Source: Selaginella moellendorffii (lineage: Eukaryota; Plantae; Lycopodiophyta). Taken from it: 64,000 nt of DNA. The position numbers and the translations under genes are program-made. The DNA lies in contig NW_003314272.1 of assembly GCF_000143415.4 (NCBI RefSeq), forward strand, positions 2,319,728-2,383,727. The letters are read 5' to 3'. Below the pieces are notes generated by a model, which saw only the letters and a list, made by a program, of their open reading frames with translations, searched no databases and was not told the DNA's origin. The first letter of the stretch is position 1. Each line of letters begins with the position of its first letter. This document shows, one piece after another, positions 312 to 20,300 of this stretch.

Positions 312-2400
312 TTAAATTTCCGGATATTCTAATGTGCTCAAATCGCCGCCGTCCGCCCGGGTCTCGTGGATCATCCCTCGAGCGCCTCGATTCGCGTAGC
401 TCGCTCGCTCGATGCAAGTTATGATCCTGTTGGCGAGTCTCCTCACAGCGCAAGCTCGATGCCAAGGTGCCATTTCCAAAACCTTTGGATCTCAAACAAA
501 ACAAGGTGTGAGCTATGGTGAGCTTCAGATGATTTCTCCAGGTTACCTCGTCCGAGTTGAAGCTCTCGAGGATTATCCCGCCGCGACAGGGCACCGCAAG
601 ATCCGACCAGTCCATGTCAAAAATTCCAAAGTCCTTGGAAAGTTCCTGGAGCAAAACAAGGAGTTTATACTGTCTAGAAGCAGGAGGGAAGTAATATACC
701 CGACCCAAAGGTGTTTCCGGGTCGCCAATTACTCCAAGCACATAGCCTCTATAATCAGCGTTCGATCCCTGCAGTACGAAAAATACATGAGAAATCGTAT
801 CATCAAAACCAGAACACGAACCTGTCCGTGAATCTCTAGAACTGGCGTTCCCTTCAAACTCTACACGAACGGTAAACACGATTGATCTTAGAACAATTGA
901 TGCTACCTGTCTAGACGCCCAATTCAAATACTCCTCCCAGGAGAGGTTTGGAGCGTCGCGATCAGGACGTAAAACTTGCCAGCCATAACGACGAAGTTGT
1001 CGCTCCAAGACATTGACGACCTTGGAGAACAAAGAAAAAACATTAGAAGTTCACTACAACCAGCGTAACTTACATCAAGGTTGAATTCCCGCTCGCCAGG
1101 AGCACCAGGTTCATATCCAGGATCTATCCAATGACCTGGAACGACTGTGATTCGGTCACTCTTACCAATTTCACGCGAGGATTTGAGGTATGTAGACGTA
1201 GGTAGTACTTTGTGCCTTTTTGTCTGCCAAAACAGAGACAATCACTAGACAAACTTTTAAGATAAAGTCGAAGTACCCGCTTGCTTAAGATTTGCGACAG
1301 TTTGATAGAAGCGATTTTTAGTCGAGCCGGCAAGCTGGTTGCGAAATTTCCACAAAACGCATTTGATGGAACATCTAATTCTCCAGTAGCAACCTGGAAA
1401 CCAAGTCTTATGACCAGTGAAAATCGCCACTGCCGAGAGTTTCCAACTCACCGCTTGACATGTCTTTGTGATTTTGATCCGCTTCGAGTACTGGATTGAT
1501 AAAACATCCTCTCCTTGTTGAACTAATACTCTAAACTGCAGAAAAGTTGGCAATGGTTTCCCCAAATATAAATATCTGCTTACCAGATTTGCAGCTTGCC
1601 AGTCGAGCTTTAATCTCCATTGAGGTCCAAGTGAGCCATTAACCTGTCAGAGAACTAGAACACCTTACTTAGCACACCACAAAACAATCATGCCCAAAAC
1701 CTCTACGCTTGCACATAGTTTCGCTTCGCCACCACCAGCATCAAACGTTCTCGTTATGCTCAGCGCAGGCACGGGAAAAAGCTCGACGACAGGACGCAGG
1801 GCTGCACAGCCCAACACCCTTCAATCACTAAACGATGGAAAAAGTGAAAGATCAAACCACTCGGAGAATAAAAGCTGCAGTACCTAGCTTCCCGCAAAAC
1901 AGTGACATTGGCTTGATCTTCGCATAAGCAAATGTGCGCGGGGAATCCATTCTCCAGTCCTCTTTTTTCCAGTCCTCTTTCGTCACTTTGATCCCCAAGA
2001 CAAGGGAGAGGGGACACCACTGCCATCGCCATCTTGCATCGTCGGCTGGATTACAAACTAAAAGTAAGAACCATTTGAAAGAAGAGGAGGAAAAGAACAC
2101 TCACACAAGCCCAAGCAATCTGGAAACGCAAGAGCGCGCTGGAACTTGACAAGAAATCCATTCGCGGGGCTGATCTTCGCTCCCAGCTTCCATCTATACT
2201 CCTGCAAGAGGAATTAGTCCCTATGAAAGAAAATGCGGGTATCCATTAGATCTAAGCTAGCTCACCCGCGATCGAACGCGCTTGTAGTGAACTGGAGGTA
2301 CATATAATCTGTACGGCCGAGTGAAGCATTGCTCTCCTATACAAACCTCGTCCTCCTCGTCGAACTCTGGGAGGTAGCACGGCGGCCCTTCCTCCCCCAT
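312..2400 (-). CDS. Beta-strand-rich N-terminal domain fused to an N-acetylmuramoyl-L-alanine amidase (Amidase_3)-like domain, ~465 aa, 13 exons
   Basis: GT-AG exons 2400-2266, 2201-2105, 2045-1884, 1801-1701, 1643-1584, 1535-1452, 1393-1277, 1223-1074, 1020-907, 860-822, 768-700, 645-547 and 482-312 join into one open frame. Motifs ITVVPGH...EREFNLDVVNVLERQLRRYGWQV...VLEIHGQG...GGIILESFN match the H/E/H/E pattern of Zn amidases. Confidence 0.75.
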
Positions 2401-2511: not shown

Positions 2512-4913
2512 ATGGCAATGGGCGGCAGAGCGCGCGGTGTGGCGTCCAAGCTTCGCCGCATTTCGGTCTGTGTCGTCGCATCTCTCGACCTCGTCTTAGC
2601 TCCTGTGATTGATCCGTGCAGGCTGGTTGCGAGATTGCTCCGCATTGGTGGTTTCGGCGATTGCTGACGACGGTAGGCGCTTGCCCGTGCGATATTTCGG
2701 GATCTGGCGTGTGATTTGTGCTGGCAATTCTTGTAGGATCTTCGATCGCGGCTGGCGGAACTGATTCCGGGAGAACAGGTGAGGTCACTGAGCTTTCCTG
2801 GAAAGCGGTAGATGAGCACTATCGTCTTCTCTATAGGAGCGACTGAAAAAGCTGAAAAAGGAGCATGGATCAGTTCCGCTCGGCCAAACCACAGTCGATA
2901 TGGTATGCGTTTGTTTGAGCTAGTTAGTCATATCTATGATCTCTCTATTCGCTTCAGGCCATTGGTGGAATGCGAGGGATTAAAGGCATGCTTTGGGAAA
3001 CGTCCCTGCTCGATCCTGAAGAGGTAGTCAAGGATTTATTTGTTCTTTGCTGTTTCAGCGTCCTTGGCAAACAGGGTATTCGTTTTCGGGGCTTGTCCAT
3101 TCCAGAGTGTCAAGAGAAGCTTCCAGCTGCCGTTTCCGACGGTGAACCGATACCAGAAGGACTGTTTTGGCTGCTTGTTACTGGTGAGGTAAGGCATTAG
3201 GCTTTCAAATGTTTTGACTTTCTTATACATTGTTCCCTTCAGGTTCCCAGTAAGGAACAAGCTGCGACGTTGACGAAAGACTGGGCTTCTCGTTCTGACA
3301 TTCCGGGCAAGTTCGATTACAATCTTTTTGCTTGTCTCACAGAAATGTGTTTCATTCAGGTCATGTGTATGACGTTGTGAATGCACTTCCGATTAATGCG
3401 CATCCAATGACACAGTTGACTGCTGGAGTTATGGCTTTGCAAGTAAGTGTTTGACATAGTTCAAGAACAGTTACTGAGCTCGTGCTACAGACCGACAGCG
3501 AGTTTCAGAAGGCGTATGAGAAGGGAATTCACAAATCAAAGTGAGTAGTCGTAGTTATATATATTCCTGATAATTGAGCGGTGTGTCTAGGTTTTGGGAA
3601 CCAGTGTACGAAGATTCGATGAACTTGATTGCTAGGTTGCCAGGCCTAGCGTCCTACATCTACCAAAGGTTTGCATAATTTGCAACTTGTAGTGATGCTA
3701 AATGTTTTCGCTGCAGAACATACCATGGAGGCAAGCTGATTGAGTCAAACAAGTCGCTGGATTATGGAGCCAACTTTGCTCACATGCTGGGTTTTAAGGA
3801 GCCCAAAATGTATGAGCTGATGCGCCTGTATCTTTCTATTCACAGGTTAGTCTGCTACAGTTTCCTTTGCCGTGAAATGAGGATGGCGTAATTGACTTTC
3901 AGCGATCACGAGGGAGGAAATGTTAGTGCACATACCGTGCGGCTGGTAAGTTTTTGTGATCTTCTCCAAAAATACTCTTGATGACTATTTATCTCTAGGT
4001 GGGGAGTGCACTATCGGACCCGTACCTTTCTTTTGCGGCCGGAATGAATGGTTTGGCGGGTCCATTGCATGGTCTTGCAAACCAGGTTTGAGTTTATCAT
4101 CGTGTGTTCTGGCCTGAAGTCTGAAACTCAATCAGGAAGTGTTGCGTTGGATTAATGAAGCCGTTGAAGCGATCGGAGCTGATGCTTCCAAGGAAAAGCT
4201 GACAAAATACGTAAAAGATACTTTGAATAGTGGAAAGGTCAGCTTTGTTTGGAATGAAAAAAATTTAAAAAATCAGTTGCTTAACTCTGCTGTACAGGTG
4301 GTTCCAGGCTATGGACATGCAGTGCTGCGTAAAACGGACCCTAGGTACACTTGCCAGCGCGAATTTGCACTAAAGCATCTGCCCGACGATCCGATCTTCA
4401 AAATGGTAGCCTTCAATTGTTGCTTTATTTTCTCATTTGGCCACACTCTGATCACAGGTATCCAATCTTTACGAAGTTGTGCCTGATATTCTTCTTGAAA
4501 CGGGAAAGGTAATACTCGCTATTCACGGCAATCATAATGCCCCCCTTCCAGGTGAAAAATCCTTGGCCTAACGTGGATGCGCATAGCGGAGTGCTTCTAC
4601 AATACTTCGGGTTGACTGAAGAGAAGTACGTTTTTCCTCTTTTTCCTCTCTTTTTTCTCATTAAAGGAAAAAAGGCTCTGACCACTTTACTTTTCTTCTC
4701 GCAGCTACTATACCGTGTTGTTTGGCGTCTCTCGGGCCTTAGGCGTTCTTGCACAGGTACTACCATTGTGCTTCCAAGCTCTCCAATTGACTGCTTGTAT
4801 CGTACCTTCAGCTGGTGTGGGATCGCGCACTTGGTCTTCCAATTGAAAGGCCAAAGAGCATGACCATGGGGTGGCTGGAGAACTATTGCAAGAAGCAAAC
4901 CGTGACAGCGTAA
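2512..4913 (+). CDS. CSY: Mitochondrial citrate synthase (multi-exon)
   Basis: [83 protein letters not shown]; Arg-rich presequence-like N-terminus. Confidence 0.95.
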
Positions 4914-11874: not shown

Positions 11875-14271
11875 ATGCGCGCTGCGCTCTTGACAAGGCT
11901 ATGTGCTCGTCGCCCCAGCCGCACTCCAGCAATGGCGCGACGATCAAGCAGCTCCACCACTTGCGCCAGCGGCGGCGGGGGCGGCGACGCATTCGCCTTC
12001 GTCGTCCAGAGCATCCTCTCGGCGCTCAATCCTACCGAGGTGGGTCTCAACGCCGCCGCGCTCGCTCCCTTCGCGCGCTACCTCTCCCACGACGTCGTCC
12101 TCGAGATCATCCGCCGCGCCAGCCGGAAGAAAGGCCTCGAGTTCTTCCACTGGGCTCGCTCCACCAGCGGCGCCTCCGGCTACCGCCACTCCGCCGCCGC
12201 CTACGAGTCCCTCATCGCCCGCCTCTGCGACGCCCGCGACGCCGCCGCCGCGCTCCTCCTCCTCCGCGCCATGCGCAGCGACGGCCTCCAGCCCAGCATC
12301 CACAGCCTCGTCGCGCTCCTCCGCGCCTACGTCGAGCTCGGCCAGATCGACGAGGCCGGGGAGATCTTCTGCTACGTGCGCAGTGCCGCCACCGTGCCGC
12401 CCGAGGCCTACTCGAGCATGATCGACGCCTTTGCGCGGCACCGCCGCTTTGACGACGCTCTCGAGCTCTCCCGCGAGGCGCTCTCGCGGGGCATCGCCGC
12501 CGACCACCACCCGCTGCTCTACGCGCTCTGCAAGGCGGACAAGATCGACGTCGCCGCCGGATGCTTGCAAGCGCTGCTGGATCACAACTTCAAGGTGGCG
12601 AGCGTGGATTGCAGCGTGGTGGTGGACGCGCTCGCTCGCGCGGACAAGCTGGAGATGGCGGCCAAGCTCCTGGAGAGATCGGTGGTGGAAGCTGGCGTTA
12701 AAGTCGACTCGCAGGCTTTCACGCTCCTCGCCACGAAGCTCTTCCGGCGCTCCAAGTTCTCCGAGGTGGTCCGGCTCTTCACGCTCCTGGCGTCCAGAGG
12801 CGTGGTCTATGGCGAGACCACGTACAAGCTCGTCGTGGACGGCCTTTGCGGCGCCGGGATGGCGAACCAGGCACTGGAGCTCGTCCGGGAGCTCAGCGGC
12901 GTCTACACTCCCACGCTCTTCATCTACAACGGGATCATCACGGGCTTGTGCCGGGCTTCCAGAGTCATGGACGCGTACAAAGTTCTGGAGAAGATGGTGG
13001 AGGAGTCCATCGTTCCAAACGTTTTCACGTACACCATCCTGCTCAACGGGCTGTGCCGGAGCAACAAGACGAAGCTGGCGCGCGAGGTGTTCCAGGAGAT
13101 GAAGCGAAACGGCTGCAAGCCAAACCCGATAACTTACGGCACGCTCATCCAGCACCTGAGCCGGGCCGGGGAGATCGACGAGGCGCTGCGTGTGATGATC
13201 GAGCAGCGCAGCCTGGAGCTCCCGACGGACGTGATTACGTGCACCACGATCGTCGGGGGGCTGTGCAAGGCCAGCCGGCTCGACGACGCGCTCAAGTTCA
13301 TGGAGGAGATGCGACAGATGGGAGTCCGTCCCAACGAGGTGACTTACAGCAACCTCGTGCATGGCTTCCGGCAGCACGGGGAGTTGGACCGGGTGATCCG
13401 TTTCTTCGAGGAGGAGAAGGCACGAAAAGGTGGCTCGCTCGAGGCAGCGGCGTATCCCGGCTACCTGGACGCGCTGTGCAAGGCGGGCTACCTGGACCGA
13501 GCTCGCAAGTCTGTGGAGGAGCTCCGGCAGTCCGGGGTCGTCCCGGACGTGGTGACTTACAGCATGCTCATCAACACATTCGCCCGGGCGGGCCAGTTTG
13601 ACGCTTCCTTGGAGCTGCTCGAGGACATGCGGAGGAACGGCGTGAAGCCGGACGTGGTGACTTACTCGACGCTCATCAACGTTCTGTGCAAGGAGAGGAA
13701 GTTCCAGGACGCGTTCCGGCTGCTGGAGCTCATGGAGGCGGCCGGGTCGCCGCCGAACGTCGTGACTTACAACAGCGTCATGGACGGGCTGTGCAAGAGC
13801 GGCAAGATGGACGAGGTTCACAGGGTCTACGAGATGATGCTCAAGAGCCGCTGCTCGCCGGACGTGGTGACTTACAGCATCATCATGAACGGCCTGTCCA
13901 AGGCCGGGATGCTCGACTCGGCCGTGAAGCTGTTCGAGCTTATCAAGTCAAGCCGCGAGGGGCCCGACGCGGCGGCCTACAGCATGGTTATCACGAGCCT
14001 GTGCCGAGCCGGGAAGCTGGAGGAGGCCTGCGGTATGTACCACGGGATGGAGGTGACGGTGGCCGGGGATAACATATGCCGCGCGCTCGCGGGGCTGGTT
14101 GCCGCGCTGTGTGACGCCGAGAGGACCGACTCGGCACGCAGGATTGTGGAGGTTGCGAGCGAGAGGGGCCACCGCATGACCAAGAGCGGTGATACTGATC
14201 TCGTCAAGATTGTCGAGGACCACCTCTTGGAGTCAAAAGAAGAACACGCGGATGCTGAGTGGAAAGCTTGA
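11875..14271 (+). CDS. P-class pentatricopeptide repeat protein, organelle-targeted
   Basis: Tandem 35-aa repeats (PDVVTYSMLINTF, PNVVTYNSVMDGLCK); Arg/Ser-rich N-terminus; first ATG at 11875. Confidence 0.93.
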   Translation: MRAALLTRLCARRPSRTPAMARRSSSSTTCASGGGGGDAFAFVVQSILSALNPTEVGLNAAALAPFARYLSHDVVLEIIRRASRKKGLEFFHWARSTSGASGYRHSAAAYESLIARLCDARDAAAALLLLRAMRSDGLQPSIHSLVALLRAYVELGQIDEAGEIFCYVRSAATVPPEAYSSMIDAFARHRRFDDALELSREALSRGIAADHHPLLYALCKADKIDVAAGCLQALLDHNFKVASVDCSVVVDALARADKLEMAAKLLERSVVEAGVKVDSQAFTLLATKLFRRSKFSEVVRLFTLLASRGVVYGETTYKLVVDGLCGAGMANQALELVRELSGVYTPTLFIYNGIITGLCRASRVMDAYKVLEKMVEESIVPNVFTYTILLNGLCRSNKTKLAREVFQEMKRNGCKPNPITYGTLIQHLSRAGEIDEALRVMIEQRSLELPTDVITCTTIVGGLCKASRLDDALKFMEEMRQMGVRPNEVTYSNLVHGFRQHGELDRVIRFFEEEKARKGGSLEAAAYPGYLDALCKAGYLDRARKSVEELRQSGVVPDVVTYSMLINTFARAGQFDASLELLEDMRRNGVKPDVVTYSTLINVLCKERKFQDAFRLLELMEAAGSPPNVVTYNSVMDGLCKSGKMDEVHRVYEMMLKSRCSPDVVTYSIIMNGLSKAGMLDSAVKLFELIKSSREGPDAAAYSMVITSLCRAGKLEEACGMYHGMEVTVAGDNICRALAGLVAALCDAERTDSARRIVEVASERGHRMTKSGDTDLVKIVEDHLLESKEEHADAEWKA

Positions 14272-14786
14272 TGATCTTGGATACCCGTAAGTACTTTTTC
14301 CTTTCTACATTTTGTTTCTTCCGATCAATAACGCAGTGCTTTTTCATTCAGCAGCGAAGACCCACTCACTGATTCGCAGGAGGGTACAATGTAAAGTAAC
14401 AAAAAGCTGGTTTTTTTCCTCTATCAGCATTAAAGTTCTTGTTTGTTCTTTTCCTTCTTTTCGTAGCAGACTTTACGGACAAAGATGACAAACAGTGGTA
14501 AGCAAAGCTCTTGTTTTTATGTTTCCAGCAGCATTGAAAGCTCTGTTACAGTCTCTGTGACGAACTATTCCTCCGGCGCAGCTTGTCCTCTAGCAGCACC
14601 GTCGAGTGGAGGCGACCTCCTTTCCTTTCCTACACAGCTTTTACGATTGCAATCGATTCACTTCCATCACTCGAGGTAGCTTTCCAGATCCTAAGACGAC
14701 AAACTCGTAGCAAAGACTTTTTTGCAGAAACTTTCCAGGCAATCTAGCAACTGGATCCATGGACTCACACTCGACACTCTGCTCGA

Positions 14787-15653
14787 CTACTCCTCGCTCA
14801 GAAGCCTCGTGAGAACCGGAGCCAGGATCTGAGGATGCGTGACGTGCGGGAGGTGTCCGCGGGCATCCAGGATCTCGAGCTCCCCTCCCAGCTGCTGGTG
14901 GAGATACTTGGCCACGGCTTGCGGCACCGCGAAATCCTCCTTGGTCTGGATAACATGGCACGGCACAGTGACGAGCGACAGTACTTTGCGAAGGTCGCTC
15001 TTGAAGATGGTCTCGGCTATGAGCAGCATGAAGTCGGGCTTTACGACGGACAGGAAGGCCATGTAGCGCTGGATACATTCTTCGCTCGCCTCGGGTCCCA
15101 GAGCGGCAGGGGCGAATCCTTGCAGCCACGAGGCATGGTCTCGCTTGATCGCGGCCAGGAGCTCGTCAACGTCCTGCTGCTCGAAGCCTCCCTCGTAGCC
15201 AGCGTCATTGATGTACCTGGATGGAGCAAGATCAATCGAGGACTTTGAAGGGAACTTCGAAGAACAAGAGTAGCAGTAGTACCTGGGCGAAGCTCCGAGG
15301 AGGACGAGCTTGGAGAAGAGGTCGGGGCGAGCGGCGGCGGCGAGGCAGCCAATCAAGCCCGACATGGAGTGGCCGACGTAGAGGCACTTGCCGAGCTGGA
15401 GCTCGGACAGGATGGCGATGAGATCCTCGGCAAAGCCTTCCATGCTCCGGTACCTGGACGCATCAAAGTCATCGTCGCTAGTAGCTCCTCCATGGCCCCG
15501 GAGATCGTAGAGCAGCACGGAGTAGCGCGGCAAGAGATGCGGGAGGAGCCCCTCCCACGCGCCTTGGCTGGCTCCAAAGCCGTGGGAGAGGACCACGAGC
15601 TCTCGGCCTTGGCCGAGGATCCGGACGTTGTGGATCTTCGCCATAGTTGACAT
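14787..15653 (-). CDS. KAI2/D14-family alpha/beta hydrolase (divergent, DDK-like), one intron 15217-15282
   Basis: HNVRILG, LSHGFG, GHSMS (Ser), ASPRY, EDFAVP (Asp), GHLPH (His); intron at the conserved SPR|Y position. Confidence 0.92.
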   Translation of the reverse strand: MSTMAKIHNVRILGQGRELVVLSHGFGASQGAWEGLLPHLLPRYSVLLYDLRGHGGATSDDDFDASRYRSMEGFAEDLIAILSELQLGKCLYVGHSMSGLIGCLAAAARPDLFSKLVLLGASPRYYCYSCSSKFPSKSSIDLAPSRYINDAGYEGGFEQQDVDELLAAIKRDHASWLQGFAPAALGPEASEECIQRYMAFLSVVKPDFMLLIAETIFKSDLRKVLSLVTVPCHVIQTKEDFAVPQAVAKYLHQQLGGELEILDARGHLPHVTHPQILAPVLTRLLSEE

Positions 15654-15747
15654 CGTTCGAGCTTGGAAATGCAAACGCTCTAGACTTCTTCTCCGGAAAG
15701 CTTGGGCTCTTGGAACTTGGAAAATGCAAAGCTCTAGAGTGGTACAC

Positions 15748-15768
15748 TCTTCTTCTTCTTCTTCTTCT
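15748..15768. repeat. (CTT)n microsatellite
   Basis: Run of CTT units. Confidence 0.7.
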
Positions 15769-16496
15769 CTACCCTGTTCTAGAGAGTGCTAGCCAGGCCC
15801 CGCTACTTATATACTCGGGAAGAGGAAGAAACTTCTGCTAAGTGGTGGTCCATGATCATTGATCCGCAAAAATGGCCAAAAACAAATAGCGCTGGCTAAA
15901 GGGGGTGGCGATGGTTTTAAGCGGCAAAATGGAAAGGAGAATACGATAGAAGGGAGGAGGAATTGCGAGACTAGAAAGAAACGTGTAGCTGTGTAGCTTG
16001 GCACCGTCTGACCTTGCTAGCCAAAAGACAAGCATCACACACCAAACCATTTGGGTCCCTCCTCTCTTGGAGGAGAAAAGGTGGGGCGTGTCCCAATCGC
16101 CAAAAGCTTCCCATTTGGAAGGGATGGTGGCAGGAAGATGATGGCCAATTCAATGCACAGGAATCCAGGCGTCGTGGCTCAGATGGATTGTCTGCTCGTT
16201 CTTTCCTTTTTGTATTCCTTGGTTTGGATTCAAGGCCTTGTTTGTTCTTCCAATTCTCTCTTGAAAGCCAAAAGCGAGCGCGCTGCACATGTTCCACTGT
16301 CTGCTCGCTCGCCAGCGAGTTTCTTTAATCCGCGGTTGGATCAGAGCGCATGAATCGCCAAAAGAATTGTTAGTTCGTTTGCATGTCAAGATCAAGCGTA
16401 ATCACAGACATATTCTGACTTTGATCAGCGAAAAGCTGTCAACCAACGCTTCGAGAGAGAAAAAAAATCCCACAAAAAAAAAGAGTAAGAACACAG

Positions 16497-16519
16497 GAGA
16501 GAGAGAGAGAGAGAGAGAG
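16497..16519. repeat. (GA)n microsatellite
   Basis: About 11 GA units. Confidence 0.8.
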
Positions 16520-16532
16520 TATTTTCTCTATA

Positions 16533-17018
16533 CTACTGGATGTACGGAATCGCGCTACCATCTTCGTACACCTTAGGAGCGGCGCCGCCACCACCACCTC
16601 CGCCATTGCTCCGCTTCTCTTTGGGCTCGTCGTCCTTGCCATAGATCCCGCCACCGTACGCCTCTTTCGTCACCGGCACAATGGGCGAGATGGTGGTGGT
16701 GGAGGACGACGATGTCTTGGACATTGCCGATTCCAGCGAGTCCTCCCTCTGGAGCCCGCCGCCAACGCCATCGCTGCTGCCTTGGATCCCACTCCCGCCC
16801 CTCTTGATCTCCTCCTCGTCGCCCTTGCGCGGCTGCGGGGCCTTGGGGGGGAAGCTCTTCTTTGCTGCCGTGAGCCCCGCCGAGGAGGCGGTGGAGATGT
16901 CGGTCCTGTCCACCGTGGAGCCCGTGGCGATGCCCGGGCCGAGCTCCGAGTTGTCCAGCCGCGTCTCCACGCTCACTGCGGCGGCATTGGGAGCCGAGTC
17001 CTCTCTGTGTGGCTGCAT
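16533..17018 (-). CDS. Small hydrophilic, LEA-like uncharacterised plant protein
   Basis: Disordered Gly/Ser/Glu-rich ORF with SPIVPVTKEAYGGGIYG and a terminal YIQ, resembling a conserved small plant family; G-box array upstream. Confidence 0.65.
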   Translation of the reverse strand: MQPHREDSAPNAAAVSVETRLDNSELGPGIATGSTVDRTDISTASSAGLTAAKKSFPPKAPQPRKGDEEEIKRGGSGIQGSSDGVGGGLQREDSLESAMSKTSSSSTTTISPIVPVTKEAYGGGIYGKDDEPKEKRSNGGGGGGGAAPKVYEDGSAIPYIQ

Positions 17019-17253
17019 TGCGCCTCCTATACACGCGATTCGCGAATCCAAGCGTTGGAACAGGACGATTGGGAGAGATCTTACCTTGTCCTAGATTCGA
17101 TCGATGCGAGGATCACGCGAGAGAGCTACCGCCAAAAAACTCGAGATGATCTCACCTTGTTTGCTCCTTGTCGCGCTATCCAACAATGGAATAACCCTAT
17201 AGCTTCATCTTCGGCCAAGTGGTCTCTCTTCAATGCGCCTCATGTACCGCGAC

Positions 17254-17380
17254 CACGTGTCCAAAGCACGATTCAACCAAAATTTTCCACGTGTTGGCGC
17301 CCGACTCACCAACATGTTGACACGTGCCAAAGTGCGATTCACCAGACATTGCGCCACGTGTCAGCCCGCGATTCACCAAT
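17254..17380 (-). promoter_or_regulatory. Array of four G-box/ABRE elements in 33-34 bp degenerate tandem units
   Basis: CACGTG at 17254, 17288, 17321 and 17355, each followed by CGA(T/C)TCA(A)CCA. Confidence 0.7.
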
Positions 17381-20300
17381 AATCTCCACACGAGCATTTC
17401 CCGCCCTCGAAGACATGAAACCTCCTGGCGTCGCGGCACACGATCCGGCGCCGCTCCATCCGCGACGCGACGGCGCTCACCGCGTGGCAATCGCCGCACA
17501 CGCGCAGGTTCTTCCCGATCCGGATCGTCGTCCCGGGCGGCGAGCTCACCAGCGCGCACGCCATGGCGATCCTCTCGCTGTGCGAGCACAGGACGAAGCC
17601 CCTCTTGTCCTCCTCGCCAATGTTGTGCGCGATCCCGCCCACATCACCGCTCATCATCCAGCCCCTCATCTCCGCGAGCTTGGCCGCGATCGCGCGGTCG
17701 CCGCAGCCCACATCTCCAGCCCCAAACCGGTGGAGGATCCCCGTTTTATCATCGATCCACCAGCTCCGCCCACTTCTCCTCGGCGCGCCGCAGCTCCTCC
17801 CCAGCTCCTCGATCCGCGACTGCTCCTCCCACATACCCAAGCTCCCGTAGAGATTCGCCATGAGCGAGAATGCCGCGCCATCGCCCGGATCGATCGCCCG
17901 CAGCGCGCCAAACGCGACCTCCGCCACGGCCGCGTTCTTCCACCGGCAGCACGCGGCCATCACCGCCGTCCACGTGGCCGTGTCGGCCTCGTACGGCATC
18001 CCCCGTACGGCGGCCACCGCGGCGTCCAGCCGGTTCGCGCGCGCCAGCATGTCCACCGTACACGTGTAGTGCTCCACGCCCGGGCGGAGTCCGTACTTCG
18101 TCTCCATCGCGCCGAGGAAGCCATGGCCGAGCTCCACCATCCCGGCGTGACTCAGCGCCGTGAGCACGCACAGGCAGCTCACCGCGTCGGGCGCGAGCTC
18201 CTCGTCGCGCATCGCGTGGAAGAGCTCCGCCACCGCGCGCCAATCGCCCTGGCGGGAGTGCGCCGCCATGAGAGCGTTCCAATCGATCAGCCGCCTCCTC
18301 GCCACGGCCTCGAAGCAGCGCCGCGCATCGGTCGTGCTGCCGCATTTGCCATACGCGTCCACCAGGCAGCTCTCCACCACGATCAGGAGGCCGTGCCGCG
18401 AGATCTCGCCATGGATCGCCCGGCAGCCCCTCAGATCCACCAGGCTCGAGCACGCCTTGAGCGCCGCCACGAATCCGGCACCGCCCTCCACCGCTAAAAA
18501 TCTCTCCTTGATCCGCCAGAAGAGCTCCAGAGCCAGCTCCCCTTCGTTGTTCTCAGCGTAGCCCCGGACAAGCGAAGCACACGAAGCCGCGCTGTGGAGC
18601 TTCATCGCGTCAAACACCCCCCGGGCGCTTGTCATGCTCCCACACTTCGCGTAGAGATCGACCACCGTGTTTGCAACCACGAGGTCGAGCTCGCCACCAC
18701 CACCAAACTTCGCTCGAGCTCGTGAGTGGATCGCCATGGCCTTGTCCAGCGACCGGAGCTTCACGAACTTGTCATCGTCGATCTCCTTGCCAGCTTCTTT
18801 GGCAGCGGCAGCAGCACAGGCCTTGAGCACAGCGACGAAGGTGACTGGATTTGGCTCGAGCTGGAGTTGGAGCTCCATACTTTCGAACAGATCTAGCGCC
18901 ATCTCTTCGTCTCCATTCTCCGTGCAGCCGTTGAGCATGACCGTCCACGATACTGTGCTGTGAGCCTCCATCCTGTCGAACACCATGCGGGCGTCTAGCA
19001 AGCTTCCACACTTGGAGTAGGCGTCGACCAGAGTGCTCTCCAAGGTGATGTCCAGCTCAACCTCGCATCTCGCAGCTTCCCTGTGGATCTCCATGCATTT
19101 CTCCAGGCTCTCCAGTTTCGCCACCTTTGCGTCGGTGCTTTCTCGTGCAGCCAAGCCGATGCACGCCTTGAGAGCAGCGACGAACGCCGGAGAACTCGTT
19201 TGAGCGCTGCTTGAGCCGAATATCGCAGCAAAGAGATCCAGTGCTAGCCTCTCCTCTCCGTTGTCTACGTATCCCAGCATCAGCACAGTCCAAGGCACTG
19301 AATCTCTCGGCCTCGCCCTCTCCAAAACTCTGCGAGCGTCTTCCAAGGCTCCACACTTCGCGTACATGTCGATCAGCGTGCTTGTGACGAACTTGTCCTT
19401 CTCAAACCCCCTGTCCCTTGCCTGAGCATGAATGCTAGTGCCTCTTTCCAGAGCCTCCCCCTTGAGAGGCCTCCCATTCCCGTCGTGAGTCGTTGCTAGA
19501 GTTGCGCAAGCCTTGATAGCAGCAACAAAGCTGGTATCATTTGGTGCGAAATCTTCTGTCAACCGAGCCAGTAGATCGAAAACCAGGTGAGTTTCACCGT
19601 TCTCTACGTATCCCAGGATCAAAGAGTTCCACGACACAACGTCCCTGTGTTGCATCCTGTCAAAGACGAGGCGAGCGTCAAGCATGCTCCCACATTTCCC
19701 ATACAAATCTACCAGAGAGCTTTGCAGGAAGATGTCCGATAAGTAGCCACTGCTTGCCGCCTGGGAATGAATAGCCATGGCCTTCTCCAAAGCTCTGATC
19801 CTGACAGTCCCCCTGTTATCCATTCCGACTAGCTTGCCTTCCTCCTCAAGTGCCAGAAACGAGCAAGCCTTGACTGCTCCGGCGAAAGTCGGCGCATTTG
19901 CTAGCGTTTCCATGTGTAGAAACAGCTCAAGCGCGAGCTCAGGCCTGCTGTTCTCTGCGTAGCCCAGGATCAAAGCCGTCCATGAAACCACGTCGTGGAA
20001 ATCCATCTTGTCAAACACGGCCCGAGCGTCCCTCAAGCTCCCACACTTTGCATAGACATCGACCAGGGTGCTAGACAAGAAAACGTCGTCACAACCAGCG
20101 CTAGCAACATGAGAATGAACAACCATACCTCGCTCCAGAGACTTCAGCTTGACCAGCTCCCCGGCTACCGGCTTGCCATATTCGTCGCCTGCCAAAGAAG
20201 CACAGATTTTGAGCACGCTGACAAAAGTTCGAGGACATGGAGGACAACCTTGATCTCTCATGGCTACGTAGAGCTCGAGCCCCAGCTCCCCCTGCCCGTT

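What the first reader, a model, noticed from the sequence alone, without database searches (positions are those of the whole stretch)
312..1223. Hidden peptidoglycan-amidase-like (Amidase_3) domain in a land-plant nuclear gene
Seen in sequence: six short exons split across ORF-track frames splice to RITVVPGHWIDPGYEPGAPGEREFNLDVVNVLERQLRRYGWQVLRPDRDAPNLSWEEYLNWASRQSLKGTPVLEIHGQGSNADYRGYVLGVIGDPETPLGRELSKDFGIFDMDWSDLAVPCRGGIILESFNSDEVLEMAPWHRACAVRRLANRIITCIERA. Established: AmiA/AmiC-type N-acetylmuramoyl-L-alanine amidases use PGH (Zn His), ExxxNL (Zn Glu), SIH (Zn His) and a catalytic Glu in a hydrophobic xLxE strand, followed by a long C-terminal helix. All four residues are present in the expected order and spacing. 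Moss plastids keep a peptidoglycan layer needed for division, and lycophytes carry Mur genes, but the hydrolases that split the septal wall are poorly known. Inference: this is a candidate plastid peptidoglycan amidase, possibly of cyanobacterial origin.
Basis: partly seen in the sequence, partly recalled or inferred. Interest (0 to 1): 0.92.

Follow-up and report, generated by a model that had tools for sequence, protein, structure and literature searches.

The report
Barrel-anchored plastid wall amidase candidate
A Selaginella nuclear gene annotated only as "uncharacterized" encodes a membrane beta-barrel joined to a very diverged bacterial-type cell-wall amidase, and it occurs only in green plants and algae that still keep a peptidoglycan wall around their chloroplasts, so it is a strong, testable candidate for the missing enzyme that cuts that wall.

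Summary
They are the 3' half of a 13-exon, 465-aa gene (2400..312) identical to Selaginella moellendorffii XP_024529816.1, "uncharacterized protein LOC9658903". RNA contigs from four studies carry every C-terminal junction.

Pfam does not call the domain: PF01520 scores 17.6 bits against a cut-off of 27. A confident AlphaFold model (pLDDT 88.8) matches 24 solved Amidase_3 N-acetylmuramoyl-L-alanine amidases at Z 12.4-14.4, and the next fold scores 9.2. Profile-profile alignment (83%, E 9e-6) places His283, Glu296 and His351 on the zinc ligands. These three and Glu403 are invariant in 27 homologues.

Residues about 42-252 fold as a 12-stranded transmembrane beta-barrel (KdgM Z 13.7, chloroplast OEP21 Z 11.6). 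The N-terminus is acidic, with no transit peptide.

The family is found in prasinophytes, streptophyte algae, bryophytes, lycophytes, ferns and gymnosperms. No angiosperm or bacterial member was found. This mirrors the reported spread of the full Mur/class-A PBP set.

Best reading: an outer-envelope-anchored plastid peptidoglycan amidase. Activity, localisation and topology are inferred. A cyanobacterial origin is unsupported. I found no description of it in the searchable literature.

The parts
312..2400 (-). Whole coding region of the gene: 13 exons, 465 aa. It equals XP_024529816.1, LOC9658903 isoform X1, of Selaginella moellendorffii.
   Evidence: The CDS spliced from the window is identical to P0051. 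All introns are GT-AG and 46-82 nt long. RNA contigs carry the junctions.
1277..2400 (-). Exons 1-7 (2400..2266, 2201..2105, 2045..1884, 1801..1701, 1643..1584, 1535..1452, 1393..1277), coding aa 1-252. They encode an acidic N-terminus with a conserved C-x-G-x-x-C-F motif, then a 12-stranded transmembrane beta-barrel (aa ~42-252).
   Evidence: Full-length AF2 model: pLDDT 81.8 with 12 long strands. VIA-align matches: KdgM Z 13.7, FapF 12.8, NalP 12.3, a designed 12-strand barrel 12.3, chloroplast OEP21 11.6. ESM Atlas look-alikes are bacterial outer-membrane barrels. Six of the 12 strands show a clear alternating hydrophobic/polar pattern (at least 0.8 against at most 0.2), and the N-termini are acidic.
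312..1223 (-). Exons 8-13 (1223..1074, 1020..907, 860..822, 768..700, 645..547, 482..312), coding aa 253-465. They encode a linker plus a diverged Amidase_3-fold catalytic domain (aa ~274-441) and a disordered tail. This is the stretch named in the finding.
   Evidence: AF2 C-domain model: pLDDT 88.8, pTM 0.85. All of the top 30 Foldseek PDB hits are Amidase_3. VIA Z is 12.4-14.4 for 24 Amidase_3 entries. PF01520 is sub-threshold in 17 of 27 members. hhalign gives probability 83%, E 9e-6.
1131..1133 (-). Codon of His283 (P-G-H motif), the putative first zinc ligand.
   Evidence: Invariant in 27 and in 30 sequences. It aligns with the His of the G-H-G-G motif of Amidase_3 enzymes.
1092..1094 (-). 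Codon of Glu296 (G-E motif at the start of helix 1), the putative second zinc ligand.
   Evidence: Invariant. It aligns with the Glu of the E-K motif in the profile-profile alignment. The His-to-Glu spacing is 13, against 14-15 in the reference enzymes.
828..830 (-). Codon of His351 (E-I-H-G-Q-G motif, strand 3), the putative third zinc ligand.
   Evidence: Invariant. It aligns with the His of the S-I-H-x-N/D motif. The Glu-to-His spacing is 55, against 53-61 in the reference enzymes.
565..567 (-). Codon of Glu403 (I-L-E-S-F-N-S-D-E strand), the putative catalytic glutamate.
   Evidence: Invariant in the 27 C-domains. It lies in strand E139-145 of the model, just before the C-terminal helix. 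It resembles the L-V-E-x-G-F-I-S-N motif. Sequence alignment did not reach it. The equivalence is inferred from structural alignments that span the whole domain.

Best explanation
The gene encodes a two-domain protein. The N-terminal half is a 12-stranded transmembrane beta-barrel of the bacterial outer-membrane / chloroplast OEP type. The C-terminal half is a strongly diverged zinc-dependent N-acetylmuramoyl-L-alanine amidase of the Amidase_3 fold, with putative ligands His283, Glu296 and His351 and putative catalytic Glu403. It lacks the autoinhibitory insert of E. coli AmiA/B/C. These points are shown: the gene structure and its expression, both folds, the alignment of the three metal ligands, the invariance of all four residues, and restriction of the family to green lineages reported to keep a complete peptidoglycan (Mur plus class-A PBP) pathway. 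These points are inferred. The barrel inserts into the plastid outer envelope without a cleavable transit peptide. With an even strand number, the C-terminal amidase emerges on the intermembrane-space side, as the periplasmic domains of OmpA-type proteins do. There it would cleave the stem peptide from the glycan of plastid peptidoglycan, allowing remodelling or splitting of the wall from its outer face during chloroplast division. The family would have been lost when cross-linked plastid peptidoglycan was lost, as in angiosperms and many chlorophytes.
For: Gene and transcript. Amidase fold: the C-domain model has pLDDT 88.8. The Foldseek top 30 PDB hits are all Amidase_3 at probability 1.0. 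VIA Z is 12.4-14.4 over 150-160 residues for 24 Amidase_3 entries, against 9.2 for the next family and below 8 for the rest. Weak but consistent sequence signal: PF01520 is the best Pfam hit in 17 of 27 members. hhalign against nine Amidase_3 domains gives probability 83%, E 9e-6, and aligns His/Glu/His. The four residues are invariant. Their spacings are 13/55/52, against 14-15/53-61/63-116 in the references. Barrel. No transit peptide: the first 40 residues hold 6-9 acidic and 0-4 Ser/Thr residues in nine orthologues. Phyletic pattern: Selaginella, Diphasiastrum, mosses, liverworts, the ferns Adiantum and Psilotum, Ginkgo, Taxus, zygnematophytes, Chlorokybus, Mesostigma, Chara, Pycnococcus and Picocystis. 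No angiosperm and no bacterium was found. The family tree follows the species tree. Literature: complete Mur+PBP sets are reported in mosses, Selaginella, Marchantia, gymnosperms and several prasinophytes, but in no angiosperm (PMC4815162; PMC12681378). A 2014 search for Ami homologues in photosynthetic eukaryotes found only DipM (PMC4015805). Bacterial barrel-plus-peptidoglycan-binding fusions in the same domain order exist: PorP/SprF+OmpA and PorP/SprF+SPOR.
Against: There is no biochemical, localisation or genetic evidence. The domain fails Pfam's own threshold (17.6 against 27 bits), and a family profile finds nothing in PDB by sequence. The catalytic Glu could not be aligned by sequence, and I could not inspect model coordinates to check the metal-site geometry. 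Barrel topology is not predictable from sequence, so the amidase could face the cytosol. Eukaryotic beta-barrels also occur in the mitochondrial outer membrane. Some angiosperms keep nine Mur genes (Citrus, Asparagus), yet no angiosperm member of this family was found, so the correlation is with class-A PBP / cross-linked wall rather than with MurA-F. Klebsormidium and glaucophytes, which have plastid peptidoglycan, did not appear among the hits. In three of four RNA assemblies the dominant contig uses an alternative acceptor (1827) and retains intron 1700..1644. Both changes introduce premature stops in the barrel half.
Confidence: 0.6

Rival explanations
1. The domain is an active Amidase_3-fold hydrolase, but its substrate is not the plastid sacculus. 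It might act on soluble muropeptides or lipid-linked precursors (turnover or quality control), or on another amide-linked envelope compound.
For: The sequence is extremely diverged from all bacterial Amidase_3 enzymes: 14-21% identity in the structural alignments, sub-threshold in Pfam. The same superfamily holds enzymes with other substrates, for example poly-gamma-glutamate hydrolase at Z 9.2 and N-formylglutamate amidohydrolase at Z 6.9. No peptidoglycan-targeting module such as AMIN, LysM or SPOR was detected.
Against: The Amidase_3 matches stand 4-5 Z units above the other superfamily members. The phyletic pattern follows the complete peptidoglycan pathway. The metal and catalytic residues are of the Amidase_3 type.
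Confidence: 0.18
2. It is a peptidoglycan amidase that is not aimed at the plastid wall. It might be a mitochondrial or cytosol-facing outer-membrane enzyme that degrades bacterial peptidoglycan, for defence or for dealing with ingested or associated bacteria.
For: There is no transit peptide. Beta-barrel proteins also reside in mitochondrial outer membranes (established knowledge). The topology is unknown.
Against: Such a role gives no reason for the family to be absent from all angiosperms and core chlorophytes while tracking plastid-peptidoglycan lineages. An enzyme fixed to an organelle membrane is poorly placed to meet free bacteria.
Confidence: 0.1
3. The amidase-like domain has lost catalysis. 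It would serve as a peptidoglycan-binding tether linking the outer envelope to the wall, as OmpA's C-domain or inactive LytM factors do.
For: The architecture parallels barrel-plus-peptidoglycan-binding fusions. Very high divergence from active enzymes is typical of degenerate domains.
Against: All four catalytic-site residues are invariant across sequences spanning chlorophytes to gymnosperms. That is not expected for a binding-only module.
Confidence: 0.08
4. It is an annotation or assembly artefact, or bacterial contamination, rather than a functional plant gene.
For: The dominant RNA contigs in three of four runs carry premature stops in the 5' half.
Against: The gene has twelve spliceosomal GT-AG introns. 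Spliced transcripts occur in four independent studies. Two allelic loci exist in the assembly. Orthologues with the same architecture run from Mesostigma to Ginkgo, in a tree that follows the species tree. It has no bacterial relative.
Confidence: 0.01

Closest known systems
Amidase_3 (PF01520) N-acetylmuramoyl-L-alanine amidases without a regulatory helix: Nostoc AmiC2 catalytic domain (5EMI), M. tuberculosis Rv3717/Ami1 (4LQ6, 4M6H), CwlD (7RAG), CwlV (1JWQ), CD27L endolysin (3QAY)
   Same: They share the alpha/beta fold over ~150-160 residues (Z 12.7-14.4, rmsd 3.0-3.6 A). The order and spacing of the His/Glu/His ligands and of the Glu in the last strand are the same. All have a long C-terminal helix. 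None has an autoinhibitory insert between the third ligand and the catalytic Glu (52 residues here, 63-70 in the phage endolysins).
   Different: Identity is only 14-21%, and the domain scores below Pfam's threshold. The motifs are altered: P-G-H-W-I-D for G-H-G-G-x-D, G-E-R-E-F-N for E-K-D/N, and E-I-H-G-Q-G for S-I-H-x-N. The gene is eukaryotic, nuclear and intron-rich. The domain is fused to a membrane beta-barrel rather than to AMIN, SH3, LysM or SPOR modules. No bacterial member of this subfamily was found.
E. coli septal amidases AmiA/AmiB/AmiC (8C2O, 8C0J, 4BIN)
   Same: Same fold (Z 12.3-12.6). The proposed role is the same: removing stem peptides so that the wall can be split at division.
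   Different: The E. coli enzymes are soluble periplasmic proteins. They carry a ~50-residue autoinhibitory helix (His-to-Glu spacing 108-116, against 52 here) that EnvC/NlpD release. AmiB and AmiC carry an AMIN targeting domain. The plant protein has none of these and is membrane-anchored.
DipM (LysM + LytM/M23), the peptidoglycan hydrolase known to be needed for chloroplast division in Cyanophora and Physcomitrella (PMC4015805)
   Same: Both are nuclear-encoded and proposed to hydrolyse plastid peptidoglycan in the intermembrane space. Both are confined to peptidoglycan-retaining lineages.
   Different: The fold and the chemistry are unrelated: DipM is an M23 endopeptidase, this is an Amidase_3 amidase. 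DipM is a soluble protein. The paper reports one DipM lineage as probably descended from the cyanobacterial ancestor and two further P. patens homologues as related to other bacteria. That study searched for Ami-type amidases in photosynthetic eukaryotes and reported none.
12-stranded outer-membrane barrels: KdgM/NanC porins, the NalP autotransporter translocator, chloroplast OEP21 (7BGH). Also barrel-first fusions such as OmpA, PorP/SprF+OmpA and PorP/SprF+SPOR
   Same: The N-terminal domain superposes on these barrels (Z 11.4-13.7). The domain order, barrel first and wall-directed domain last, is that of the OmpA-like and PorP/SprF fusions.
   Different: No sequence similarity to any of them was detectable. 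I could not confirm a barrel fused to an Amidase_3 domain in bacteria. A few AlphaFold DB bacterial 'MurNAc-LAA' entries align over both halves at low TM score, but I could not retrieve them.

Membership tests
Amidase_3 / MurNAc-LAA (PF01520) superfamily | Three-layer alpha/beta fold of the catalytic domain. | tested here: met
   The AF2 model has pLDDT 88.8. It matches 24 solved Amidase_3 entries at Z 12.4-14.4 over 150-160 aligned residues. The next fold scores 9.2. The Foldseek top 30 hits are all Amidase_3.
Amidase_3 / MurNAc-LAA (PF01520) superfamily | Score above Pfam's gathering threshold for PF01520. | tested here: not met
   The window protein's C-domain scores 17.6 bits (E 0.0042) against a cut-off of 27, and only profile positions 1-86 of 174 match. 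Seventeen of 27 homologues give the same sub-threshold hit, with best E 0.0015. It is therefore a remote relative at superfamily level, not a member as Pfam currently defines the family.
Amidase_3 / MurNAc-LAA (PF01520) superfamily | Zinc ligands His (end of strand 1), Glu (start of helix 1) and His (strand 3) in conserved order. | tested here: met
   hhalign of the family profile against nine Amidase_3 domains (E. coli AmiB, two further enterobacterial amidases, six phage or phage-record enzymes) gives probability 83%, E 9e-6. It aligns His283, Glu296 and His351 with the G-H-G-G His, the E-K Glu and the S-I-H His. All three are invariant.
Amidase_3 / MurNAc-LAA (PF01520) superfamily | Catalytic Glu at the end of the last strand (L-V-E-x-G-F-x-S-N motif). 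| tested here: inconclusive
   Glu403 is invariant and lies in strand 139-145 of the domain model, followed by F-N-S-D-E and the long helix. Sequence-profile alignment did not reach this region. The equivalence rests on structural alignments that run to the end of the domain and on motif resemblance.
Amidase_3 / MurNAc-LAA (PF01520) superfamily | Hydrolysis of the MurNAc-L-Ala amide bond of peptidoglycan. | not testable with these tools
   This needs a muropeptide-release or zymogram assay.
Regulated septal amidases of the AmiA/B/C type | Autoinhibitory helix inserted between the third zinc ligand and the catalytic Glu. | tested here: not met
   The His-to-Glu spacing is 52 residues here, against 108-116 in the AmiA/B/C-type sequences and 63-70 in the phage endolysins without the insert.
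Transmembrane 12-stranded beta-barrel (bacterial OMP / chloroplast OEP type) | Closed barrel of 12 antiparallel strands with a lipid-facing alternating hydrophobic pattern. | tested here: met
   The model has 12 long strands. Matches: KdgM Z 13.7, NalP 12.3, a designed 12-strand barrel 12.3, OEP21 11.6. Six of the 12 strands show a clear alternating hydrophobic/polar pattern, at least 0.8 against at most 0.2. Barrel closure and membrane insertion themselves come from the model only.
Plastid peptidoglycan system of green plants | Phyletic co-occurrence with the complete Mur + class-A PBP gene set, and absence where that set is lost. | tested here: met
   Members occur in mosses, liverworts, lycophytes, ferns, gymnosperms, streptophyte algae, Pycnococcus and Picocystis. 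No angiosperm appears among the hits of three database-wide searches. Pathway distribution is taken from PMC4815162 and PMC12681378. The test is incomplete. Klebsormidium, hornworts and glaucophytes were not seen, the marine members have no taxon label, and no genome-level tblastn of angiosperms was possible.
Plastid peptidoglycan system of green plants | Location in the envelope intermembrane space, where the wall lies. | not testable with these tools
   There is no transit peptide. Localisation is inferred from the barrel domain only.

The most novel reading that the evidence does not exclude
This family is the long-sought wall-splitting amidase of green plastids. It would be a host-controlled enzyme that carries its own outer-envelope barrel and cuts the peptidoglycan sacculus from the outside during chloroplast division. 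It would have arisen once in the green ancestor, by fusion of an outer-membrane-type barrel with a bacterial amidase. It would then have been lost together with cross-linked plastid peptidoglycan (class-A PBP) in angiosperms and most chlorophytes. If so, it is both a new marker for the presence of a true plastid wall and a new architecture for a cell-wall hydrolase.
Probability: 0.45. Interest if true: 0.9.

Novelty: new variant of a known kind. Interest (0 to 1): 0.8.

Why it matters
Chloroplasts of mosses, lycophytes, ferns, gymnosperms and many green algae keep a peptidoglycan wall that is needed for their division. The enzymes that open or split that wall are barely known. The held literature names DipM, a LytM peptidase. 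From memory, a lytic transglycosylase and a carboxypeptidase are also known in moss. A directed search for Ami-type amidases in photosynthetic eukaryotes reported none (PMC4015805).

This gene family supplies a concrete candidate with orthologues in tractable models: Physcomitrium LOC112294388 and Marchantia Mp4g21500. The question "how is the plastid wall cut?" therefore becomes directly testable by knock-out, localisation and a simple enzyme assay.

The barrel-amidase architecture would also be an unusual way of placing a wall hydrolase on the outer face of the sacculus under host control. The family's presence or absence may be a sharper genomic indicator of a real cross-linked plastid wall than the Mur genes, several of which have been repurposed in angiosperms.

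Tried and rejected
- Pfam on single exons and on the 250-aa intron-read-through ORF gave nothing. Only the intact domain gives the weak PF01520 signal.
- A family profile searched against all PDB sequences gave only chance hits.
- hhalign against the single E. coli AmiB sequence aligned only the His..Glu stretch, at probability 5.6%. A nine-sequence Amidase_3 alignment was needed to reach 83%.
- With three short endolysins only, the alignment was poor and mis-registered the last strand.
- Scanning 185,579 bacterial and archaeal genomes with the two most conserved motifs gave 56 pattern matches, none confirmed. I therefore dropped the idea of naming a bacterial donor, and 'cyanobacterial origin' stays unsupported.
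- I tried to name the marine 1,100-aa clade, to test presence in Micromonas against absence in Ostreococcus and Bathycoccus. I used a region search, two contig look-ups and neighbour-gene cluster look-ups. No taxon label was obtained. Those proteins share only the amidase domain with the plant family.
- The 2021 moss paper on MurJ and peptidoglycan hydrolases (PMID 33078277) is not held. My statement that it deals with MltB and a DD-carboxypeptidase, not an amidase, is from memory.
- My first guess for the exon-3 acceptor (2057) was wrong. The RNA data and the RefSeq protein put it at 2045.
- I considered a soluble beta-sandwich for the N-terminal half. I rejected it because the matches are specifically 12-stranded membrane barrels.
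Full report
**What is in the sequence**

On the minus strand between 2400 and 312 lies a 13-exon gene. Its introns are 46-82 nt long and all have GT..AG ends. The six exons named in the finding are 1223..1074, 1020..907, 860..822, 768..700, 645..547 and 482..312.

The complete spliced CDS equals, residue for residue, a 465-aa database protein (P0051). NCBI lists it as XP_024529816.1, [quoted passage not shown]. A second, allelic locus encodes a 465-aa protein that falls in the same 90%-identity cluster. My first guess for the exon-3 acceptor was 12 nt off. The correct exon 3 is 2045..1884.

**Transcription**

I laid contigs assembled from four RNA runs of four different studies on 200-2600. 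They carry every junction of the C-terminal half (482|547, 645|700, 768|822, 860|907, 1020|1074, 1223|1277). They also carry 1393|1452, 1535|1584, 2045|2105 and 2201|2266.

There is one complication in the 5' half. In three of the four runs the dominant contig joins 1884 to 1827, not 1801, and runs unspliced through 1700..1644. By my translation both changes create premature stops. The productive joints 1801|1884 and 1643|1701 appear as minor contigs in one run and as loose ends in another. Contig depth is not quantitative, so I record this as unexplained.

**The C-terminal domain**

No Pfam model reaches threshold. Exon pieces give nothing. The intact domain gives PF01520 (Amidase_3) at 17.6 bits, E 0.0042, against a cut-off of 27, and only over the first half of the profile. 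The same sub-threshold hit is the commonest one, seen in 17 of 27 homologues. A family profile finds no solved structure by sequence.

Structure prediction from a 27-sequence alignment is confident (pLDDT 88.8, pTM 0.85). Foldseek's first 30 PDB matches are all N-acetylmuramoyl-L-alanine amidases of the Amidase_3 family. They include Nostoc AmiC2, LytH, CwlD, CD27L, Rv3717, CwlV, AmiA, AmiB and AmiC. Re-alignment gives Z 12.4-14.4 over 150-160 residues at about 3.0-3.7 A for 23 of 24 such entries. Phage poly-gamma-glutamate hydrolase follows at 9.2, and generic flavodoxin-like folds score below 8.

**Catalytic residues**

His283, Glu296, His351 and Glu403 are invariant in 27 C-domains, from chlorophyte algae to gymnosperms. 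The first three are invariant in the 30-sequence full-length alignment. There Glu403 is listed as nearly invariant; one sequence, the 376-aa Adiantum model, ends before that position.

I built a reference alignment of nine genuine Amidase_3 domains: E. coli AmiB, two further enterobacterial amidases, and six phage or phage-record enzymes. hhalign of the plant family against it gives probability 83%, E 9e-6. It places His283 on the G-H-G-G histidine, Glu296 on the E-K glutamate and His351 on the S-I-H histidine.

The second half did not align by sequence. The equivalence of Glu403 with the catalytic glutamate rests on three things:
- its invariance;
- its position in the last strand before the long helix;
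- structural alignments that run through to the end of the domain.

From memory, the catalytic residues of CwlC/CwlV are Glu24 and Glu141. That numbering fits the alignment end-points, but I did not verify it here.

Residue spacings are 13/55/52, against 14-15/53-61/63-116 in the references. The plant domain therefore lacks the ~50-residue autoinhibitory insert of AmiA/B/C.

**The N-terminal half**

A full-length model (pLDDT 81.8) shows 12 long strands between residues ~47 and 251. An unbiased structural search matches 12-stranded membrane barrels:
- KdgM, Z 13.7
- FapF and a COG4313 channel, 12.8
- the NalP translocator, 12.3
- a designed 12-stranded barrel, 12.3
- the chloroplast outer-envelope channel OEP21, 11.6

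ESM Atlas look-alikes are bacterial outer-membrane barrels. Six of the 12 strands show a clear alternating hydrophobic pattern.

The domain boundary coincides with the exon 7/8 boundary. The N-terminus is acidic (6-9 Asp/Glu and 0-4 Ser/Thr in the first 40 residues of nine orthologues) and carries a conserved C-x-G-x-x-C-F motif. This is unlike a stromal transit peptide, a comparison made from established knowledge.

**Distribution**

An exhaustive HMMER search of 1.84 billion cluster representatives found only 41 hits. Word-indexed searches with a full-length member and with the domain profile found these named taxa:
- Liverworts: Riccia, Marchantia, Calypogeia
- Mosses: Sphagnum, Physcomitrium
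- Lycophytes: Diphasiastrum, Selaginella
- Ferns: Adiantum, Psilotum
- Gymnosperms: Ginkgo, Taxus
- Streptophyte algae: Closterium, Netrium, Mesotaenium, Chlorokybus, Mesostigma, and a fragment in Chara
- Prasinophytes: Pycnococcus/Pseudoscourfieldia and Picocystis
- Unnamed marine picoeukaryote contigs

No angiosperm and no bacterial protein appeared. A motif scan of 185,579 bacterial and archaeal genomes was empty. A maximum-likelihood tree of the domain broadly follows the species tree: land plants form one clade within a zygnematophyte grade, and chlorophyte groups lie outside. This fits vertical descent with losses.

According to the literature, complete Mur sets including class-A PBP occur in Physcomitrium, Sphagnum, Selaginella, Marchantia, gymnosperms and several prasinophyte classes. 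No angiosperm has a bifunctional PBP, even those with nine Mur genes (PMC4815162; PMC12681378). The family's range matches that of the complete set.

**Mechanism proposed**

Shown: a barrel-plus-amidase protein with intact catalytic residues, expressed, and confined to peptidoglycan-retaining green lineages.

Inferred:
- insertion of the barrel in the plastid outer envelope;
- emergence of the C-terminal amidase in the intermembrane space, by analogy with OmpA-type and PorP/SprF+OmpA or PorP/SprF+SPOR fusions;
- cleavage of stem peptides from plastid peptidoglycan from its outer face during division or remodelling.

**Rivals**

The rivals are another substrate, a non-plastid role, and a non-catalytic tether. 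They are less well supported but not excluded.

**Known or new**

I found no description of such a protein in the full-text library. A 2014 study that looked for Ami-type amidases in photosynthetic eukaryotes reported only DipM. The gene itself is annotated, but only as uncharacterized, and no precomputed Pfam domain is attached to any member.

I class it as a new variant of a known kind. It is an Amidase_3-superfamily enzyme in a new sequence family and a new architecture, in a eukaryotic organelle context. A cyanobacterial origin cannot be supported with the present data.

Noticed in passing
window 1584-1884 (minus strand): In three of four RNA assemblies the dominant contig uses an alternative 3' splice site at 1827, 26 nt upstream of the productive 1801, and retains the 57-nt intron 1700..1644. 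Both changes put premature stop codons in the barrel-coding half. The productive joints appear only as minor contigs or loose ends. This may be regulated unproductive splicing or incompletely processed RNA.
   Followed up: partly
window 2201-2266 (minus strand): One run shows an alternative joint 2201|2250 beside the main 2201|2266. RefSeq lists an isoform X2 (430 aa) that differs from X1 only at the N-terminus and so lacks the acidic C-x-G-x-x-C-F head.
   Followed up: partly
window ~2512-4130 and beyond (plus strand): The divergently transcribed neighbour is a multi-exon citrate synthase gene. The exon at 3999-4088 hits PF00285 at E 9e-9. The two genes share a ~100-nt intergenic or promoter region around 2400-2512.
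   Followed up: partly
window 321, 976, 987-988, 1167, 1191, 1343, 1713, 1941, 2011, 2305-2330: RNA contigs differ from the window at these single positions, in run-specific combinations. They are most simply alleles or haplotypes, since two loci, LOC9658903 and LOC9657049, exist in the assembly. I do not read them as editing.
   Followed up: no
P0026, P0037 and relatives (loci L011:10001-13342, L012:1335-4637): Marine picoeukaryote contigs encode 1,100-1,180-aa proteins that share only the amidase domain with the plant family. Ahead of it lies a long Lys/Glu/Arg-rich, coiled-coil-like region, and the proteins end in a conserved G-C-S-x-S-G-C-P-R motif. The contigs are compact and intron-poor. 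I could not name the organisms.
   Followed up: partly
P0035 (Chara braunii GBG72905.1): The Chara hit is an 871-aa model in which the last third of the amidase domain is joined to an integrase/retroelement-like N-terminal part. This is probably a gene-model artefact or a transposon-disrupted copy.
   Followed up: no
window 12001-20000: G+C rises to 0.59 here, against 0.39-0.53 elsewhere in the window, with a strong negative GC skew at 16-20 kb. I did not examine it.
   Followed up: no
AlphaFold DB hit A8I9G7: A 371-aa AlphaFold DB entry without a listed name or organism aligns with residues 1-248 only, the barrel half. This hints that barrel-only relatives may exist. I could not retrieve the sequence.
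   Followed up: no
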